Assembly (NCBI GenBank): GCA_951406725.2
Contig: OX597835.1
Location: 46,872,001-46,936,000, forward strand
Reading direction: 5' to 3'
Origin: Octopus vulgaris
Lineage: Eukaryota
Length of the DNA stretch: 64,000 nt
The position numbers and the translations under genes are program-made. How positions within the stretch are numbered: position 1 is the stretch's first letter; the number at the start of each line of letters is the position of its first letter. This document shows, piece after piece, positions 7,746 to 59,485 of this stretch. The notes beneath the pieces are model-generated. The model ran no database searches, had not been told where the DNA came from, and was given only the letters and a program-made list of their open reading frames with translations.

Positions 7746-7807
7746 CCATGTAATCCACTATCACCCTCTCACTAAATGCCTGCCCTTGTGTCTGTATTAG
7801 AAATGAA

Positions 7808-7858
<51 letters not shown>

Positions 7859-7861
<3 letters not shown>

Positions 7862-8092
7862 CGCCGGCGTGGTTATGTGGTGAGAAGCATGTTTCTTCAT
7901 CTGTGTACGGCTTTGAAAGCCAATTTAATGAAATAATGAAATAGAGAAGCATGTTTCTTAAATACATGCTTCCGGATTCAGCCCCACTGCGCTGCACCTT
8001 GAGCAACTGTCTCCTACTATAACCCCTAGCCGAGCGAGCCTTGTGAGTGGATTCGGTAGACGAAAACTGAAGAATCGCTGGTCACGAAACGC
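7859..8092 (+). mobile_element. SINE family A head, interrupted by a 46-bp retroelement 3' stub
   Basis: SINE head GGCGCCGGCGTGGTTATGTGGTGAGAAGC... with a 16-bp duplication GAGAAGCATGTTTCTT at 7882-7897 and 7944-7959. Confidence 0.75.
7898..7943 (+). mobile_element. Extremely 5'-truncated Tx1-like non-LTR element (3' terminus only)
   Basis: CATCTGTGTACGGCTTTGAAAGCCAATTTAATGAAATAATGAAATA between 16-bp TSDs. Ends in the same AATTTAATGAAATA as the element at 16901-18905. Confidence 0.75.
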
Positions 8093-8096
8093 TGTA

Positions 8097-8390
8097 TTCG
8101 ATGGTCAGGACATGTAGCCAAGATAGACGAGTCGAGGTTCGCACACCAAGTCTTATTCAGCGAGATCCCTTCAGCGAAGAGAGCACAGGGTTGCCCTCTT
8201 CAAAGCTACAAGGACCAACTCAAAACAATACTGAAAGTCACTGGACTTGAGTCTAAACCATTTGAAACACAAGCCCGTGGCCGTATCAAGTGGCGGAACC
8301 AAAAACTTCAAAACTACCAGAAGGGAAAAAGGAAGAAATCAAACTACTGGAGAGATACTCTCAGCTGCTCAGGGACCCACCCTTGCTAAC
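8097..8390 (+). pseudogene. RTE-clade LINE ORF C-terminal fragment
   Basis: Manual translation gives RWSGHVAKIDESRFAHQVLFSEIPSAKRAQGCPLQSYKDQLKTILK, resembling the RTE C-terminal RWxGHVxRM...KRxxGxP..RYKD motif. Confidence 0.6.
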
Positions 8391-8818
8391 AATGCAGATG
8401 ACACAGAAGTCTCTAAGAGATTACAGAACCATGGAGGTGTTGCGCATCTGCAGTCGGTGTTAAACGCAACATGCAGGTGGGCTGTGGAAAAGAACATGCT
8501 GTTTAATGCTAGAAAATTCCAAGCCCTGCGCTACCAACACACGAAAAGCTGACAGGATACACTGGCCCAAGTGGGACTGCAATCCACGAATCAAAATCAA
8601 TGCGTGACCTGGGCACCGTCAGAAGTAATGATGCATCTTTCCCGGTGCATATTTACTAAGTTGGCAGACGGTTGGTTGGAAGGATCCTTCGAAAAGGAAA
8701 CCATGGTGGTCCTCTGGAGGACATTTGTCCTCAGCCATCTAGATTATTGCTCCCAATTATGGTCAACACGCAATGTAAAATTAACAACGGAACTCAAAGC
8801 AATCCAGCGAAGCTACAC
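8390..8818 (+). pseudogene. CR1/L2-group LINE reverse transcriptase fragment
   Basis: ADDT...NMLFNARKFQALRY... and LWRTFVLSHLDYCSQLWS...ELKAIQRSYT in frameshifted pieces; typical post-YADD region of CR1/L2/Daphne RTs. Confidence 0.7.
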
Positions 8819-16818: not shown

Positions 16819-16861
<43 letters not shown>

Positions 16862-16900
16862 TAGGCGCAAGAGTTGCAGTGTGGTAAGAAGCTTGCTTCC

Positions 16901-18905
16901 GGTTCCGGTTGTTCAGTTGTCTTCTCTGTGCCCTTGAAGTCGTCACGCTGGTGTGCAGCGGACGAAAGTTGAATTGAAAGAAGCTCTACCGTAAGGTAAG
17001 ACTTTTTGCTTTTTGAGTCCAGTAGGATTTGTTGCCTGTAGGTTTTATTATTTTTTTTTTGTACAAGCAAGGAGTCCTTACTGGATTCGGAGCTTTTTGT
17101 CTGCCGCGGTAGAGACGTGTGTGTTTTCTCACATAACTGAGAAATTGTGTGTGGAGTTTACTCCAAGTTGTTTTTGAAATTTTTTGTGCCGACGTGGATT
17201 TTACAAAGGATTTGCCAGAAGTACCTTTCGGCCTAAAATTATTTTCTTTGCCAACATTTGAACTCTTCTTCAAATCTATCATTTAATTTGGAACAAAAAC
17301 TTTATTGAACTGTTATTTTTATTTTTTCTTCCCTTCTGTTGCGTCTTTCTTTCTTATTTTGTGTATCTTTCTTCATTTTAAAACTCTATTGTGAACTGTA
17401 TTTGAACTTTTTTTTAAAATGGCAAAGGAATTATTAGTGTGGGAATTGACACCTCCCAAGACATGGCTCGAAGAGTTCGAAAGGAAGGCGGTGGTATTGA
17501 GGACTTATTCTAAGTCGCTCGATACCATAACCGTCTTCCCGAAAGCCACGATTCTGAAAGAGCTGGCAGAATACATGCCAGCTATTAAATTCATTTCACG
17601 GGGAGTCAAATATGCAACGGTCTGGTTGCTATTTGACTCCCCCCAAGAAGCTTGCGAGTTTGCAAGCCGGCCCCTCGAGGGCAATGGAATTATGTTCCTT
17701 CCCAGTTATTGTGGGAAGAAGTTGACGAGGGCTTGGGTCTGCGGTTTGCCACCCGGAATTGAGCCCGAGTGGATAGACGATTCTATCCACTGGGGTCTGA
17801 GTGGTAGCAGTACCAAGCTGCTCAACGTAAAAATTTTGCCTGCGGCTGATTGGGAGGGCTCAAAAGCTGTTTTGACCCTATGGACCCAATCAGCCGAAAG
17901 TCTGGTTTTCCCAGATTTTTTTAGGATGGCCGGGTCTAGGTATCCGGTGATGCTCGAGGGACGCTCCCCCAAGTGTCACCTGTGCCTAGAAACCGTCCAC
18001 ATCAAGAAAAACTGCCCCAAGAACCAAAATAGGGTCGTGGAGCAGTTAATAGAGGAATCACTCCCTGCTCCCTCAATGGAGGGAGAGAAGGAGGAGGATG
18101 ACGAGGAGGTTTCAACCTCCTCGAAAAAACGGAAGCGAAACGTGGGCAACAATGGTTGCCCACCGAAGGACCCGAGGGCTGTGGGACAAAAGGAGGACCT
18201 GCTGGAGACAGTAAAGGAACACCACCCTCCCGCGACCCAAGGGGAAAAGAAAAGAAAAAAGAAAAACGGGACATTGCCGGCAGGTTGTGACACGCTGCCG
18301 GCGTGTCCCGATGCTCCTTCGGCGGGTGTGCCGCTGGAAGAGGAATTTGTGGTCCTCTTCCACAAGGGAGGAACTCTGCAGAATGTAATCAGAAAATTTG
18401 AGAGGAAGGGCCGGTGGGAGGGGCTTCTGTCCTGCACGGAGGACTCTGAGTGGCCATCGCAGGTACTGCGGATGTCATATGGGAAACTGATCTGAGCAGG
18501 ATAATGAATTCTTTCCCGGCGGACTCCTTTAGATATATGACCAAGTGGTCCGGCTCAAAACTGACTAGGTGCTTCGAAGAAGCGAGGAGCCTGGTCGGAC
18601 AGAAAACTTGAAGTGTTGGACGTTTGGACTCAAAAAGAGTCTACAAAATCCAAAAAAAAAAGTGAGAGGATTATTGCCTCGTGTGTGAGTTTTTTTTTAA
18701 AACTATGTAAGAGGTTTATCGCCTCACTGTGTTTCTTTAAAAAAATGAAAAAAAGAACAATGTTTTAAAGAAGCGAAAGTCGGCGGGCGCTTTCGTCTTC
18801 TCCCATCCTTATCATCCTTGTATCATCATCATTCATCCCATTAATGTCTGTGTCCAGCCCGCAAGCTTCTCTGTATGCTGCCCTTGTGGCAAATTTAATG
18901 AAATA
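16901..18905 (+). mobile_element. ORF1-only (half-L1/HAL1-like) Tx1/L1-clade non-LTR element
   Basis: 15-bp TSD AAGAAGCTTGCTTCC (16886-16900, 18906-18920), ~520-bp 5' UTR, single ORF1, ~410-bp 3' UTR ending CTGTATGCTGCCCTTGTGGCAAATTTAATGAAATA. No endonuclease or RT coding sequence. Confidence 0.85.
17419..18495 (+). CDS. Tx1/L1-type ORF1 nucleic-acid-binding protein (358 aa) with CCHC zinc knuckle
   Basis: Uninterrupted ORF; RRM-like N-terminal half (ATVWLLF, RAWVCGLPPGI), YPVMLEGRSPK-CHLCLETVHIKKNC (CX2CX4HX4C), then a charged low-complexity tail. Confidence 0.85.
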   Translation: MAKELLVWELTPPKTWLEEFERKAVVLRTYSKSLDTITVFPKATILKELAEYMPAIKFISRGVKYATVWLLFDSPQEACEFASRPLEGNGIMFLPSYCGKKLTRAWVCGLPPGIEPEWIDDSIHWGLSGSSTKLLNVKILPAADWEGSKAVLTLWTQSAESLVFPDFFRMAGSRYPVMLEGRSPKCHLCLETVHIKKNCPKNQNRVVEQLIEESLPAPSMEGEKEEDDEEVSTSSKKRKRNVGNNGCPPKDPRAVGQKEDLLETVKEHHPPATQGEKKRKKKNGTLPAGCDTLPACPDAPSAGVPLEEEFVVLFHKGGTLQNVIRKFERKGRWEGLLSCTEDSEWPSQVLRMSYGKLI

Positions 18906-19075
18906 AAGAAGCTTGCTTCCCAACCATATGGTTCCGGGTTCAGTCTCCTGTGTGGCACTTTGGGCAGCTGTCTTCTACTATAGTCTCGGTTCAGCCAAAG
19001 CTTTTTGAATGGATTTGGTAGATGGAAACTGAAAGAATCCCATCGTATACAAATATATATTTATGTGTGTGTGTA

Positions 19076-38759: not shown

Positions 38760-38820
<61 letters not shown>

Positions 38821-38821
<1 letters not shown>

Positions 38822-41270
38822 TGTTTCTTTATTAGCCACACAGGGCTGCACACAGATAGAACAAATTACAAGGTAGAGCTTTTCTTTTGAAGGTAAAAAA
38901 AAAAAATAAAAATAAAAATAAAATAAAATAAAATAAAAAAAAAAATAAAAAAGGGGGGGTCGATCAAAAGGGATCGTAAAAGGAGAGAAAGAGGACAAAA
39001 AAGGGGGGGTAAAAAAAAGGGGGAGAGGAAAAAAATTGATCAATAGGGATCGTTATCACAGAAATGTCAATATGAAGTGTAAAGGGGAGGACAGGTGAGG
39101 TTTACCCGTGGAAAGAAAAGCCTACGGAAAAGACCACGGTAACCTCGGTCAATGAAGTCACATGTTATATTTCTTTTTTCTTTTTTTTTTTTGCAAATAA
39201 GCAACTCTCTGTATTAATTTTTACGGTTCATAGAATCATAGTCAAGGTGGCTTCGTCATTCATACGTGCCATCCTTGCTACATTCACCCATCTTTTTTTA
39301 AAACATTCACTAGACAAAACTTGCCTTTCTACACTCACTTTTTTCTTCAAGTGATACTTGAAGAAGTTGATGAGAGATTGACCAGAGAGGAAAGTGTTTG
39401 TCTCTAATCCTTTCAGGCGCGTCCACCAGATACATTCTTTCGCCATAGCCACAAGTATGATAAAATTAGCTCTTCCTTCCCGTTTGAAGGAAGGAGGCGT
39501 GACGATATTAACGATAGACTCGGCTGATAAACCGCCACGTCCCACACGTGACAGCAGTCGTTCGACATAAGCCCACAGGTGGGAAATTGCTGGACACTGC
39601 ACGATTGCGTGCAGAGCGGTTTCGTCGCTCTGCCCGCATCTCGGGCAGGTCGGCCCCGTGTTTCTCGAGCCATGCCTATAGAGCTTATCCCGAACGGGTA
39701 GCGCTTCTCGGTAGCACCGCCAGGCCAGGGATCTCTGGAAGTTGTCCATAGGTCCCGGGCCGAAAGTCGTTTGAAACAGGCGGGTCAGGTATTTCTCGTC
39801 GACGCCCAGGTTTGCCCCGAGCTCGTCGTCGTACCTCCCCTCCACTAATCCCCTATAGAATGCTTTGGTTGTGTTGAAGTCACTCAAGGTCGACCCGGGA
39901 CGGCAGAGTTGCTTGAGAGCAACGCGACACTCGCGGTGCCATTCGCCCTTCCTCGGCCTCTTTTTGATCCACGACTGTAGTTCGGTCATGGAGACGAGTT
40001 GCGGGAATGCGTGCCTCACAAACGGCGACCACACCTGTTCACCGTCGTCTACATAGAGCCGGAGATGTCGCAGTCTCAGCGCGTGTCTGCGCATCATCAA
40101 CCACGGCATGCCCAGCCCTCCTTTTAACGGGTGTTGACAGCAAATGGATCGCCTGACCATCGGGACGCATCCTTTCCACAAGAAGCGGAAGAGGATGCGT
40201 TCTAGTTTGGTGATGGTAGGGTCGGGACAAGGTACGACGGTCAGGCGGTAGTAGATGATGGACGCGATGTACGCGTTCACCACCTCCGCCCGACCTTTTA
40301 GGGACAGTTTCCTCTCGGCCCATTGCTGGGCGAGAGTGACCACCCTACTCGTTTTCTTGTTCCAGTTCTTCTCCATTTGGAGGTCCGGACCGAACCAGAC
40401 CCCGAGCAACTCAACCGGGCCGTCTGTCCAGCGTCCCACGACGGAGGTACTGGTGGACGGCATGGGCTTGCTTCTCCAGGTGCCGAGCCGCAAGCCCACT
40501 GACTTTTCCCGGTTGATTTTTGCTTCTGTCACCGCTTCGTAGTCTTTCAGTGTCTCGCCGACCCGCTCGATGTGCTCGTGGCTTGACACTATGACGGTGA
40601 CGTCGTCCGCGTATGCAGACACGCTCGTCCCGCATCCCAATTCTCGCGGGATGCCCCTTAGAGTCGCCAGCTTCCGCAGTAGTGGCTCAAGAGTCAATAC
40701 GTATAGAAGCGCCGAGAGGGGGCATCCCTGACGGACCGAACGTGCAATGTCGAAAGGTCTCGATAGATGTCCATTTACGCGAATTACCGAACGGATGCCT
40801 CTGTACAAGGCAGCTATCCAGCCGCGGAAGACGGGACCGAAACCAGCCGCTCTCAGGACTGCCTCCAAGTATCGATGGTCTACCCTATCAAAGGCTTTCG
40901 ATTGATCCAAGTTGATCAGGGTCCCACCCATGCCAGGTTCGTTAACTACCCTGTCTATGATGTAGCGCATCAGATGGAGGTTGTCATGGATGCTCCGGCC
41001 CGGCACGGCGCACGTTTGTACGTTGTCGACCAGTTTCTCGATGACAAGCGCCAACCTCTTGGCTAACACCTTTGTCAAAATTTTCAGGTCTGCATTGAGC
41101 AGTGTGATTGGTCTAAAGTTATCTATAATGTTTCCCTTGTTTAGATCTTTCTTCAGCAGAGTTACAGCTCCTCGACTCACAAAACCGGGTATGCTCCCGT
41201 TTTGCTGCCAGTTGCAGTATACCGCTGCCAAGACGTCTCCAAACAAGTCTGGCATACAATTGTAAAACTC
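38821..41270 (-). mobile_element. 5'-truncated Tx1/L1-clade non-LTR retrotransposon inserted in (GATA)n
   Basis: Flanked by (GATA)n at 38759-38821 and 41271-41429. The 3' UTR ends TCTGTGTGCAGCCCTGTGTGGCTAATAAAGAAACAT. Confidence 0.9.
39228..41270 (-). CDS. Tx1/L1-type ORF2 (RT domain + C-terminal zinc-binding domain), 5'-truncated, uninterrupted
   Basis: [66 protein letters not shown]; no endonuclease domain. The ORF-track N-terminus (LSIY repeats) is microsatellite. Confidence 0.93.
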
Positions 41271-41337
<67 letters not shown>

Positions 41338-41346
41338 GTAGGTAGG

Positions 41347-41429
<83 letters not shown>

Positions 41430-41574
41430 TCGGCCGGCAAGAAATAACAGACAAATACACATCTGAAATTATAATTTAAGAGATTCAAAAAGAGAACACA
41501 GCATGGTCACAGCTCGTGAGCTGAAACTAGATAAAATGAAAATGAAAATGAAAATTATGCCTGCTAAATATTGA

Positions 41575-42437: not shown

Positions 42438-42702
42438 ATATATATATATATATAACTGATTGAATGAAGTGAGTACAGGTAGGAATTGAAATGGAGACCG
42501 CGGCACAGTTATTAGTGTAAAACGAATAGAGAACGATATGAGTGCTGTGAGGTGTTGTTATTGAACACACATCCTTTGAGATCGGGTGCCCCACCCCTAA
42601 TCAAGGGCAAAAATATTGAAACTTGTACGAGCAGAAATACACACACTTGTACACGCAAGCAAATACTTACCATCGCACGTGCCCGTCATACAGATACCAG
42701 CA

Positions 42703-45999: not shown

Positions 46000-46236
46000 A
46001 GACTTTTTTGTTAAAAAAACAAAAGACTGCGGAAACAGATGCTATTACCGTATAACGTCTCAGGAATGTATATTATTATAGGCGCAGGTATCTTTTGGTA
46101 ACCGTAAGCTTGCGGGGACGAACTACATGGTATCGGTTGTCACTGCGATGCATCTTGGGCAAACACAGACACACAAACATATACACACACATACATATAG
46201 CCTATATAAGTGGATTTTACGAAAAAAAACAAAAGA

Positions 46237-58480: not shown

Positions 58481-58667
58481 TGCATTTAAAACCTCCTTCT
58501 TCCTTTCCTTTCCTGAGCCCTGGGCGTCCAATCACACCACACTTGTTTCACGTTCTCGCGTTGTTGTGTTTTCTCTTTGTTCATGTTTGGATTAACTATA
58601 TATATATAGCGACAGTGGACGCTGGAAAAAGTATAAGTATTTGTGAAGGAAATCTAATTCTCGCCGA

Positions 58668-58737
58668 CAACTGTGATTGTCACACGCTGATGAGAGGTCA
58701 ATACCTCGAAACTCGAGTCCGTGTGTATCATAAGTTG
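58668..58737 (+). ncRNA. Canonical extended type I hammerhead ribozyme, copy 1 (predicted cleavage after C58719)
   Basis: Stem I CACACG/CGTGTG, extended by TGTGAT/ATCATA and CAAC/GTTG across a TGT/T internal loop; CTGATGA; stem II GAGG-TCAATA-CCTC; GAAA; palindromic ACTCGAGT stem III; GUC triplet. Confidence 0.92.
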
Positions 58738-59019
58738 AAGACGGGAAGGATGACTTCCCTTTGCAAATACTGACAGGACACAGAAAGTGTGTCTATGGCC
58801 AGCTGGAGGAGTGTGTCCTCCTGGGGCTAAAAACTACAGTAGCATCCACCCTTAGGGGTAGCCATATTGAAATGGCAAATATACGTCACGATGTGTTACC
58901 GCTACTGTATATAACTCACTCTGATATTTATCATTGTTTGATTTCACTTTTTCAATATCAGCGACAGTGGACGCTGGAAAAAGTATAAGTATTTGTGAAG
59001 GAAATCTAATTCTCGCCGA

Positions 59020-59089
59020 CAACTGTGATTGTCACACGCTGATGAGAGGTCAATACCTCGAAACTCGAGTCCGTGTGTATCATAAGTTG
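59020..59089 (+). ncRNA. Canonical extended type I hammerhead ribozyme, copy 2 (predicted cleavage after C59071)
   Basis: Identical to copy 1, 352 nt downstream. Confidence 0.92.
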
Positions 59090-59485
59090 AAGACGGGAAG
59101 GATGACTTCCCTTTGCAAATACTGACAGGACACAGAAAGTGTGTCTATGGCCAGCTTGAGGAGTGTGTCCTCCTGGGGCTAAAAACTACAGTAGCATCCA
59201 CCCTCAGGGGTAGCCATATTGAAATGGCAAATATACGTCACGATATATATATATTCATTTGAATCTAAATTTTGCTGAACTTATATATATATATATGTAT
59301 GTATGTATGTATGTATAATGTGCATATATGGGTACAGGACGTCAGCAATTGTCTAAACAACATGAAATACGTAGACAAAAGAATTAAATAGGTAAACAAC
59401 GAGAAAAAAACCGTTATTGTTTACGTATTTACCTCGTTTGTCAACATATTTCATGTTGTTTACACAGTTGCTGACGTCCTGTACC

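What the first reader, a model, noticed from the sequence alone, without database searches (positions are those of the whole stretch)
7882..7959. Second, independent insertion at the same SINE position suggests a SINE/tRNA-targeting retrotransposon
Seen in sequence: another family A SINE head carries a 46-bp insert flanked by a 16-bp TSD (GAGAAGCATGTTTCTT), which is the diverged equivalent of the AAGAAGCTTGCTTCC TSD at 16886/18906. The insert ends in the same AATTTAATGAAATA as the 2-kb element but differs upstream, so it is a separate event from a related subfamily. Empty sites are present in other copies (e.g. ~19896, ~28300). Inference: two hits at one position within 64 kb imply sequence-specific target-primed reverse transcription into the tRNA-like (anticodon-arm region) head of a very high-copy SINE. 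That would be a retrotransposon using a SINE as an abundant safe harbour and probably disabling its Pol III promoter spacing. Established knowledge: Tx1 families targeting tRNA, snRNA, 5S and microsatellite sequences exist.
Basis: partly seen in the sequence, partly recalled or inferred. Interest (0 to 1): 0.78.

Follow-up and report, generated by a model that had tools for sequence, protein, structure and literature searches.

The report
Octopus LINE that targets a SINE
Two separate copies of one retrotransposon family sit at exactly the same nucleotide of an abundant octopus SINE, and a third does so at an unrelated locus in another octopus species, so this is a site-specific LINE of the L1/Tx1 type that uses a SINE as its landing pad: a new target for a known kind of element, not a new mechanism.

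Summary
A 46-bp insert (7898-7943) lies between perfect 16-bp duplications (7882-7897 / 7944-7959) inside a SINE head. It sits at the same nucleotide, and in the same orientation, as a 2005-bp element (16901-18905, 15-bp duplications). The two 3' ends are homologous (26/36 nt, with two compensatory changes in a short hairpin). Each pair of duplications is identical within the pair but differs between pairs, so these are separate events. A third copy in Octopus sinensis, at a non-orthologous locus, breaks a SINE head at the same position. The 2-kb copy encodes only ORF1 (two RRM-like domains plus a CCHC knuckle). That ORF1 and the 3' end link it to octopod LINEs with APE endonuclease, RT and zf-RVT. 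One such relative in the window (about 38822-41270, minus strand) sits in a (CTAT)n microsatellite. The best reading is a target-specific L1-group (Tx1-like) LINE family whose target is the stretch just 3' of the SINE's A box. Three points remain unshown: genome-wide enrichment (no octopus genome was searchable), the autonomous partner, and Tx1 clade membership by phylogeny. The Rfam tRNA model does not recognise the SINE head. This is a new member of a known kind and is moderately interesting.

The parts
7860..7881 (+). SINE copy B, 5' part of the head up to the break (contains the A-box-like TGGTTATGTGG)
   Evidence: nhmmer hit 7855-7896, model positions 3-44; junction table
7882..7897 (+). 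Left target-site duplication, GAGAAGCATGTTTCTT
   Evidence: 16/16 identical to 7944-7959
7898..7943 (+). 46-bp, severely 5'-truncated LINE 3' end: TCTGTGT, hairpin GGCTT-TGA-AAGCC (7909-7913 / 7917-7921), then AATTTA(ATGAAATA)x2
   Evidence: 26/36 ungapped identity to the 3' end of the 2-kb element, with 2 compensatory stem pairs
7944..7959 (+). Right target-site duplication
7960..8078 (+). Rest of SINE copy B (B box and body); a diverged copy, 76% identical to copy A
   Evidence: nhmmer hit 7945-8080, model positions 31-167; identity
16863..16885 (+). SINE copy A, 5' part of the head up to the break
16886..16900 (+). Left target-site duplication, AAGAAGCTTGCTTCC
   Evidence: 15/15 identical to 18906-18920
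16901..18905 (+). 2005-bp ORF1-only LINE derivative: 5' UTR of about 518 bp, ORF1, then a 410-bp 3' UTR ending in the hairpin TGCC-CTTGT-GGCA (18879-18882 / 18888-18891) and AATTTAATGAAATA
   Evidence: no ORF2 remnant by tblastn; its 5' end is homologous to the O. sinensis copy
17419..18495 (+). Intact ORF1, 358 aa: two RRM-like domains (about residues 14-180), a CCHC knuckle (CHLCLETVHIKKNC) and a disordered basic/acidic tail
   Evidence: homologous to the ORF1 of the Argonauta full-length LINE (E=1e-19) and of L004 (5e-9); AlphaFold model; Foldseek best matches are tandem-RRM proteins
18906..18920 (+). Right target-site duplication
18921..19045 (+). Rest of SINE copy A
   Evidence: nhmmer hit 18906-19045, model positions 30-170
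38822..41270 (-). RT-bearing, 5'-truncated relative (ORF 39231-41462: RVT_1 + zf-RVT). Its 3' end TCTGTGTGC-AGCC-CTGTGT-GGCT-AATAAAGAAACAT has the same architecture. (CTAT)n lies on both sides (38760-38820 and 41271-41431), so it looks like a microsatellite-targeting sister family

Best explanation
A family of APE-type, L1-group (Tx1-like) non-LTR retrotransposons in octopods integrates by target-primed reverse transcription at one fixed position of an abundant SINE that carries Pol III A and B boxes. The bottom strand is nicked between the T and the A/G of top-strand ...TGTGGT|RAGWAGC..., one base after the A box. The element RNA carries a short 3' hairpin followed by AATTTA(ATGAAATA)n and is copied from that nick. 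The top strand is cut 15-16 bp downstream, which produces the duplications. The 2-kb copy is complete at its 5' end but lacks ORF2 entirely, so it is an ORF1-only 'half-LINE' that must borrow endonuclease and RT from an autonomous partner not present in the window. The 46-bp copy is an aborted, 5'-truncated product of a sister subfamily. Shown here: the junctions, the duplications, the independence of the events, the homology of ORF1 and of the 3' end to APE+RT elements, and a sister family sitting in a microsatellite. Inferred: that the partner's endonuclease reads the sequence, the TPRT order of events, and the safe-harbour benefit.
For: The break point and orientation are identical in three events: window copies A and B and O. 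sinensis locus L001 at 9475. The O. sinensis flanks share only short dispersed repeats with the window, so that locus is not an orthologue. The events are independent. Each duplication pair is 100% identical within the pair, but the A and B target duplications differ at 4 of their 15 shared positions. The host SINEs are only 76% identical and the inserts differ at 10 of 36 positions. Every copy of the family found in the cephalopod DNA I held (window, L001-L003) is in a SINE head: 3 of 3. LINE identity rests on several points: 5' truncation, a 3' hairpin kept by compensatory changes (T-A to G-C and C-G to T-A), and the same tail architecture in an RT-bearing window element and two Argonauta elements. 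ORF1 is homologous to the ORF1 upstream of APE+RT+zf-RVT in Argonauta and has a tandem-RRM fold plus CCHC. Target choice looks like a lineage trait, because the RT-bearing relative has (CTAT)n on both sides. As precedent, Tx1-clade families target DNA transposons, LTR elements, snRNA and 5S genes and microsatellites (PMC4494074). L1-Tx1 is reported as a recently active LINE group in O. vulgaris, with 13 families and 421 insertions (PMC13282606).
Against: The sample is only three copies. No octopus genome could be searched, and the scans for the 3' end in metagenome and prokaryote collections returned only chance hits. No copy with ORF2 carries the SINE-type 3' end, so the endonuclease responsible is unknown. 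Clade assignment (Tx1 versus another L1-group clade) was not tested by phylogeny. The hit targets differ at 4 of 15 duplicated positions and also upstream of the break, so recognition is either confined to a short core (TGTGGT|RAGWAGC) or is not purely by sequence. The O. sinensis copy has lost its 3' part, so only its 5' junction is documented.
Confidence: 0.8

Rival explanations
1. Targeting is real but not read from the DNA sequence by the endonuclease. Instead the integration complex is tethered to Pol III factors (TFIIIC/TFIIIB) bound to the SINE's A and B boxes, as in Dictyostelium TRE elements or yeast Ty3, and the fixed distance from the A box sets the break point.
For: The break lies one base after the A box, between the A and B boxes, which stand at canonical tRNA spacing. 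The hit copies differ at 4 of 15 duplicated bases, and copy B is a strongly diverged SINE at 76% identity, so sequence tolerance is considerable. Retrotransposon targeting to Pol III genes through the transcription machinery is established (PMC5911963, title and abstract only).
Against: Known tethered systems integrate outside the transcribed body, upstream or downstream, and with some positional scatter. Here three events share one nucleotide inside the region that TFIIIC would cover. A sister family sits in a microsatellite, and related Tx1 elements choose targets through their endonuclease (PMC4494074, Introduction). A shared core, TGTGGT|RAGWAGC, is conserved in all three hit sites.
Confidence: 0.12
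2. The 46-bp insertion did not happen at this locus. It happened once in a SINE master copy, and the insert-bearing SINE then spread as a subfamily, so the window shows a SINE variant and not a local LINE integration.
For: The insert adds only 62 bp between the A and B boxes and contains no run of four T, so Pol III transcription through it is conceivable (direct reading of 7898-7943; tolerance of A-B spacing is my own knowledge). Copy B differs from the consensus all along its length while its two duplications are still 16/16 identical. That pattern is what a subfamily-specific master sequence would give.
Against: No second copy of this composite is in the window or in the loci fetched. Even if true, the founding event is still an independent hit at the same nucleotide, because both duplications carry the copy-B-specific bases, so this changes where the event occurred and not the inference of targeting.
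Confidence: 0.2
3. There is no targeting. Either one ancestral insertion was inherited by both copies through duplication of the SINE plus insert, or this is a chance coincidence favoured by SINE abundance and a loose L1-like TT|A nick preference.
For: The SINE is very abundant, at about 13 copies in 64 kb or about 3% of the window. The bottom-strand nick CTTCTT|A resembles the T-rich|A preference of L1 endonuclease (my own knowledge).
Against: The chance of two random hits at that nucleotide and orientation is about 7e-9. The duplications are identical within pairs but differ between pairs at 4 positions, which common descent would explain only through parallel changes in both halves. The inserts differ at 10 of 36 positions, with compensatory stem changes. 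A third hit exists in another species at a non-orthologous locus.
Confidence: 0.03

Closest known systems
Tx1L of Xenopus laevis and the crocodilian Tx1-Mar families (Tx1 clade, APE-type LINEs that insert into another transposon)
   Same: These are LINEs with ORF1 and an APE+RT ORF2 that integrate at preferred positions and in a fixed orientation inside a specific, abundant transposable element: Tx1D piggyBac, Mariner-N4_AMi, and for other Tx1 families Harbinger or LTR elements (PMC4494074). Non-autonomous elements share the same target preference.
   Different: The target here is a SINE head (between the Pol III A and B boxes), not a DNA or LTR transposon, and the host is a cephalopod mollusc. 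Clade membership by RT phylogeny was not tested, and the autonomous copy for this target was not found.
Kibi and Koshi, and crocodilian (TTCC)n/(TTTC)n-specific Tx1 families
   Same: These are microsatellite-specific relatives within a target-specific LINE group (PMC4494074). The window's RT-bearing relative has (CTAT)n on both sides.
   Different: The repeat unit differs, and only a single copy was seen here, so the preference is not established statistically.
NeSL-1_TV, LIN15_SM and LIN25_SM (tRNA-gene-specific non-LTR elements) and Dada DNA transposons
   Same: They insert sequence-specifically inside tRNA or other small-RNA genes, treating them as multicopy safe sites (PMC4640811, PMC3706591, PMC8869645).
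   Different: NeSL and LIN elements use a restriction-like endonuclease and Dada is a DNA transposon, whereas relatives of the present family carry an APE endonuclease. The target here is a SINE, and no true tRNA gene was available to test.
HAL1 ('half-L1') ORF1-only derivatives of mammalian L1 (from my own knowledge: Bao and Jurka 2010)
   Same: A LINE derivative that keeps an intact ORF1 and the LINE ends but has no ORF2, and so depends on a partner for EN and RT.
   Different: HAL1 is not target-specific. Here only one complete ORF1-only copy is documented, because the O. sinensis copy is cut off after ORF1.
Dictyostelium TRE5/TRE3 and yeast Ty3 (Pol III-gene-directed integration)
   Same: Retrotransposons that use Pol III-transcribed units as landing sites (PMC5911963).
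   Different: Those integrate outside the gene at a distance set by transcription factors. Here the break is inside the unit at one fixed nucleotide with a conserved core sequence.

Membership tests
Non-LTR retrotransposon (LINE) integrated by TPRT | Variable 5' truncation with a constant 3' end; target-site duplications of variable length; no terminal repeats | tested here: met
   The 2005-bp and 46-bp copies share the 3' end, with duplications of 15 and 16 bp
L1 group / Tx1 clade | ORF2 with an N-terminal APE endonuclease, RT and a C-terminal Cys-His motif | tested here: inconclusive
   Met in relatives linked through ORF1 and 3'-end homology: Argonauta L002 and P0010 have Exo_endo_phos + RVT_1 + zf-RVT, and the window RT element has RVT_1 + zf-RVT. 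The SINE-borne copies themselves have no ORF2.
L1 group / Tx1 clade | RT domain clusters with Tx1L and Keno rather than with L1 or other clades in a phylogeny | not tested
   No named Tx1 or L1 reference sequences were obtainable with these tools. The only lead is that octopus repeat annotations list 'L1-Tx1' as the L1-group LINE class (PMC13282606, PMC8967140).
L1 group / Tx1 clade | ORF1 of the RRM + CCHC zinc-knuckle type | tested here: met
   CCHC motif in ORF1 (weak zf-CCHC hits in the homologous ORF1s); model with two RRM-like domains; Foldseek best matches are UP1, SFPQ/NONO and IMP3 RRM12
Target-specific LINE | Independent copies at the same nucleotide and orientation of one target sequence; empty targets exist | tested here: met
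   3 of 3 copies, against 8 empty sites in the window. Sample of three only.
Target-specific LINE | Genome-wide majority of 3' junctions at the target | not testable with these tools
   No octopus assembly was searchable, and the collection scans gave only chance hits
Half-LINE (ORF1-only non-autonomous family) | Intact ORF1, ORF2 absent, LINE 5' and 3' ends retained | tested here: met
   ORF1 of 358 aa has no stop and aligns to the end of the Argonauta ORF1. No ORF2 remnant by tblastn. The 5' end is homologous to the O. sinensis copy.
Half-LINE (ORF1-only non-autonomous family) | Several copies share the same ORF2-less structure (a family, not a one-off deletion) | tested here: inconclusive
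   The only other copy (L001) is interrupted at about 10975, just after ORF1
tRNA-derived SINE (SINE2) | Internal Pol III A and B boxes at tRNA-like spacing in the head | tested here: met
   A box TGGCTGTGTGG at head positions 11-21 (1 mismatch); B box GGTTCAGTCCC at 54-64 (2 mismatches); 43 nt start to start
tRNA-derived SINE (SINE2) | Head recognisable as a tRNA (cloverleaf or sequence model) | tested here: not met
   No RF00005 match at gathering score over the window or at E<=10 on two good copies, and ARAGORN finds none. Only an acceptor-like GCGCAG/CTGCGT pairing appears in the MFE fold.
RLE-type tRNA-gene-specific elements (NeSL/LIN) | Restriction-like endonuclease C-terminal to RT | tested here: not met
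   Relatives carry an N-terminal APE (Exo_endo_phos) domain

The most novel reading that the evidence does not exclude
An octopod LINE lineage has specialised on the Pol III promoter region of the genome's most abundant SINE, a target with perhaps hundreds of thousands of copies. It has spawned an ORF1-only half-LINE that keeps the same site specificity. Short inserts such as the 46-bp stump leave the SINE transcribable, so LINE-derived 3' modules could be carried onward inside new SINE subfamilies. That would be a three-layer parasitism (half-LINE on LINE on SINE), and possibly a route by which SINEs acquire new LINE recognition tails. The same endonuclease might also cut the parental tRNA genes.
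Probability: 0.2. Interest if true: 0.65.

Novelty: new member of a known kind. Interest (0 to 1): 0.42.

Why it matters
Target-specific LINEs are rare natural examples of retrotransposons that write DNA into a defined sequence. Each new target and endonuclease pair widens the catalogue used to understand, and eventually to redirect, APE-type endonuclease specificity. A SINE head as the target would give the element an enormous number of harmless landing sites. It would also add a layer to the LINE-SINE relationship: a LINE parasitising a SINE that is itself mobilised by a different LINE. For octopus genomics, it would explain part of the nested repeat structure and give a datable marker system, since occupied and empty SINE sites can be compared. 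It does not change the known mechanism of TPRT or of Tx1-type targeting.

Tried and rejected
(1) Genome-wide test by proxy. I scanned metagenome contigs and genome contigs for TCTGTRTN{13,17}AATTTAATGAAATA. All 23 hits were chance matches in AT-rich microbial DNA, with no hairpin and no SINE nearby.

(2) More copies through proteins. The single-sequence ORF1 search and the ORF1 profile search returned only one cephalopod protein, O. sinensis LOC115225585. The window's own ORF1 is not on record.

(3) Autonomous partner. RT homologues P0002, P0003, P0005 and P0007 were fetched (P0006 is not on record). Where a 3' end is present, it has the same hairpin architecture but a different terminal motif and flank. 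None carries the SINE-type end.

(4) tRNA identity of the SINE head. Rfam at gathering score over the whole window, Rfam at E<=10 on two good copies, and ARAGORN all gave nothing.

(5) Target of the distant L004/L005 tandem array. No Rfam family sits at the junctions, and I did not pursue it further.

(6) MAFFT alignment of the five 3' ends misregistered the Argonauta sequences. I therefore read the stem pairs directly in the shared 36-nt register and from single-sequence folds and did not use the count of structure pairs.

(7) Template-switch chimera (small RNA joined to a LINE). Rejected, because the SINE continues after the insert and the 15-16-bp duplications flank the insert inside the SINE.

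(8) Orthology of the O. sinensis copy with the window copy. Rejected, because the flanks share only short dispersed repeats.

(9) Pol III read-through from the SINE as the source of the element's RNA. Considered unlikely, because the 5' UTR has T5 runs about 105-115 nt into the element (about 17004-17014).

Full report
**The observation.** GAGAAGCATGTTTCTT stands at 7882-7897 and 7944-7959 and encloses 46 bp (7898-7943). AAGAAGCTTGCTTCC stands at 16886-16900 and 18906-18920 and encloses 2005 bp. The terminal 14-mer AATTTAATGAAATA occurs only at these two junctions in 64 kb, even with one mismatch allowed (0.15 expected).

A profile of the SINE finds about 13 copies in the window. In the alignment and the junction table, both inserts follow the same column...TGTGGT|, in the orientation of the SINE. 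With the strict core TGTGGTRAGWAGC there are six sites in the window, two of them occupied. Two random insertions would coincide in this way with a probability of about 7e-9.

**Independence of the events.** Each duplication pair is identical within the pair (16/16 and 15/15). The A and B target duplications differ at four of their 15 shared positions, and the host SINE copies are only 76% identical. A single ancestral insertion would need the same substitutions in both halves of a pair.

The inserts also differ. In an ungapped 36-nt register they share 26 positions.

**A third event in another species.** ORF1 of the 2-kb element has a single database relative, an uncharacterised Octopus sinensis protein at 68% identity. 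At its locus (L001), a SINE head runs up to ...GTGTGGT AAGTAGCTTGCTTCC and then passes directly into the homologous 5' UTR of the element. This is the same break region and the same orientation.

The surrounding DNA shares only short dispersed repeats with the window, so the locus is not an orthologue. That copy is cut off after ORF1, so only its 5' junction is documented. A sensitive search of the window and of the cephalopod loci in hand found no other fragment of the family. All three known copies are therefore in a SINE head.

**What the element is.** The 2-kb copy consists of a 5' UTR of about 518 bp, an intact 358-aa ORF (17419-18495) and a 410-bp 3' UTR. The ORF has no Pfam hit of its own, but it carries a CCHC knuckle.

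- By tblastn it matches the ORF1 that lies upstream of an APE+RT+zf-RVT ORF2 in an Argonauta hians element (E = 1e-19) and in a distant tandem array from an ENA assembly (E = 5e-9).
- An AlphaFold model is moderately confident for residues 14-180 (per-10-residue block means about 62-89; whole-protein mean pLDDT 55.8, pTM 0.38). It shows two beta-alpha-beta-type units.
- Its best structural matches are tandem-RRM proteins: hnRNP A1 UP1, SFPQ/NONO and IMP3 RRM12.
- There is no trace of ORF2, and ORF1 aligns to the very end of the Argonauta ORF1.

This is therefore an ORF1-only derivative, not a truncated ORF1.

The 3' end (TCTGTRT, a 4-5-bp GC-rich hairpin, then an A-rich tail) recurs in an RT-bearing element in the window (about 38822-41270, minus strand; RVT_1 + zf-RVT). 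It also recurs in two Argonauta 3' ends and in an octopod-like contig from ENA.

The RT-bearing window element is 5'-truncated and has (CTAT)n on both sides. That is the signature of a microsatellite-targeting sister family.

**The target.** The SINE head has an A box at positions 11-21 (1 mismatch) and a B box at positions 54-64 (2 mismatches). The spacing is that of a tRNA gene, and there is an acceptor-like pairing. However, neither the Rfam tRNA model (at gathering score over the window, or at E<=10 on two good copies) nor ARAGORN recognises it. 'tRNA-derived' therefore rests on the promoter layout only.

The break falls after head position 22, one base past the A box. The duplication covers positions 23-37, between the two boxes. 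The three hit sites share TGTGGT|RAGWAGC and differ elsewhere. On the bottom strand the nick is 5'-CTTCTT^ACCACA-3'.

**Mechanism.** The best-supported account is target-primed reverse transcription by a target-specific, APE-type, L1-group LINE. The steps are a bottom-strand nick at the fixed site, priming on an RNA recognised through its 3' hairpin, and a top-strand cut 15-16 bp downstream. Abortive copying then gives the 46-bp stump, and complete copying gives the 2-kb element.

The ORF1-only element must be mobilised in trans by an autonomous partner. I could not find that partner.

Two points are inference: that the endonuclease reads the sequence, and that the SINE serves as a harmless, abundant landing site. 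The main rival is tethering to Pol III factors on the A and B boxes. Its appeal is the position next to the A box and the tolerance of a diverged target. Three things weigh against it: the single-nucleotide precision inside the transcribed unit, the conserved core, and the microsatellite-targeting relative.

- The 2-kb insert separates the boxes by about 2 kb and brings T5 runs about 105-115 nt into the element (about 17004-17014), so that SINE copy is surely dead.
- The 46-bp insert adds only 62 bp and has no T4 run. From general knowledge of TFIIIC flexibility, that copy might still be transcribed. This leaves open that the composite is, or could become, a SINE subfamily.

**Comparison with what is known.** Tx1-clade LINEs are the classic APE-type target-specific group. 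Tx1L inserts into the Tx1D piggyBac element. The crocodilian Tx1-Mar families insert into Mariner-N4_AMi at preferred positions and orientations. Other Tx1 families insert into Harbinger or LTR elements, U2, U5 and 5S genes, satellites and microsatellites (PMC4494074). tRNA-gene specificity is documented for RLE-type NeSL and LIN elements and for Dada DNA transposons (PMC4640811, PMC3706591, PMC8869645).

L1-Tx1 elements are listed among the recently active LINEs of O. vulgaris, and SINEs make up 11.6% of that genome (PMC13282606). In six literature searches I found no report of a LINE specific for a SINE head or of target specificity in cephalopod LINEs. That is absence from the searchable library, not proof of novelty.

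The family works like a Tx1-type element. Membership of the Tx1 clade was not tested, because no reference sequences were available for a tree.

**Verdict.** It is a new member, with a new target, in a new host group, of a known kind of element. It is moderately interesting to transposon specialists and not surprising in mechanism. The genome-wide census, the autonomous partner and the endonuclease assay are the missing decisive pieces.

Noticed in passing
window 38760-41431 (minus strand): A 5'-truncated RT-bearing LINE (RVT_1 + zf-RVT, ORF 39231-41462) has (CTAT)n on both sides and a 3' hairpin and tail like those of the SINE-borne inserts. It appears to be a microsatellite-targeting sister family.
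   Followed up: partly
window 16901-16918 versus 18930-18946: The first 8-18 nt of the 2-kb element (GGTTCCGGTTGTTCAGTT) resemble the SINE's own B-box region 9 nt beyond the right duplication (GGTTCCGGGTTCAGTC). The O. sinensis copy starts with different 'extra' bases. This could be chance, a 5'-junction template jump, or a B-box-like motif in the element. It is unexplained.
   Followed up: partly
window 8080-8300 (+): A fragment encoding a LINE ORF2 C-terminus (…IRWSGHVAKIDESRFAHQVLF…KDQLK…, RTE/CR1-like by eye) abuts the tail of SINE copy B, which it truncates. It is unrelated to the family studied.
   Followed up: no
window, flanks of all SINE copies (e.g. 7785-7859, 16822-16860, 42443-42460; tails at 19046-, 20039-, 28059-): The SINE ends in ...GAAAGAAGCCCGTCG followed by (TA)n/(TATG)n/(TG)n runs, and full-length heads are often directly preceded by (TA)n. 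The SINE, or the LINE that moves it, seems to have a (TA)n-type tail or target of its own. Its tail is unlike the 3' end of the family studied, so that family is not the SINE's mobiliser.
   Followed up: partly
L004/L005 (ENA ERZ21867824, contig ctg122906l): A distant relative at about 45% RT identity (546-aa ORF1, a 146-aa ORF, and a 1153-aa APE+RT+zf-RVT ORF2) forms a head-to-tail tandem array with a period of 6596 bp. No Rfam family lies at the junctions, and the organism is unknown.
   Followed up: partly
L002 (Argonauta hians) 8014-8650: Two copies of the same LINE 3' UTR and tail lie in tandem about 370 bp apart (ends at about 8285 and about 8650) behind a nearly full-length element. This suggests repeated insertion at one place.
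   Followed up: no
window 46080-46165 (+): A second, diverged SINE-like head (ATAGGCGCAGGTATCTTTTGGTAACCGTAAGCTTGCGGGG…) shares the ATAGGCGCAG start but not the target core. It is probably another SINE family, and it is uninterrupted.
   Followed up: no
window 58604-59248 versus L001 7327-7826: A dispersed repeat is shared with O. sinensis at about 90% identity. Together with the 76% nucleotide identity of the element copies, this suggests the window comes from an octopus species related to, but distinct from, O. sinensis.
   Followed up: no
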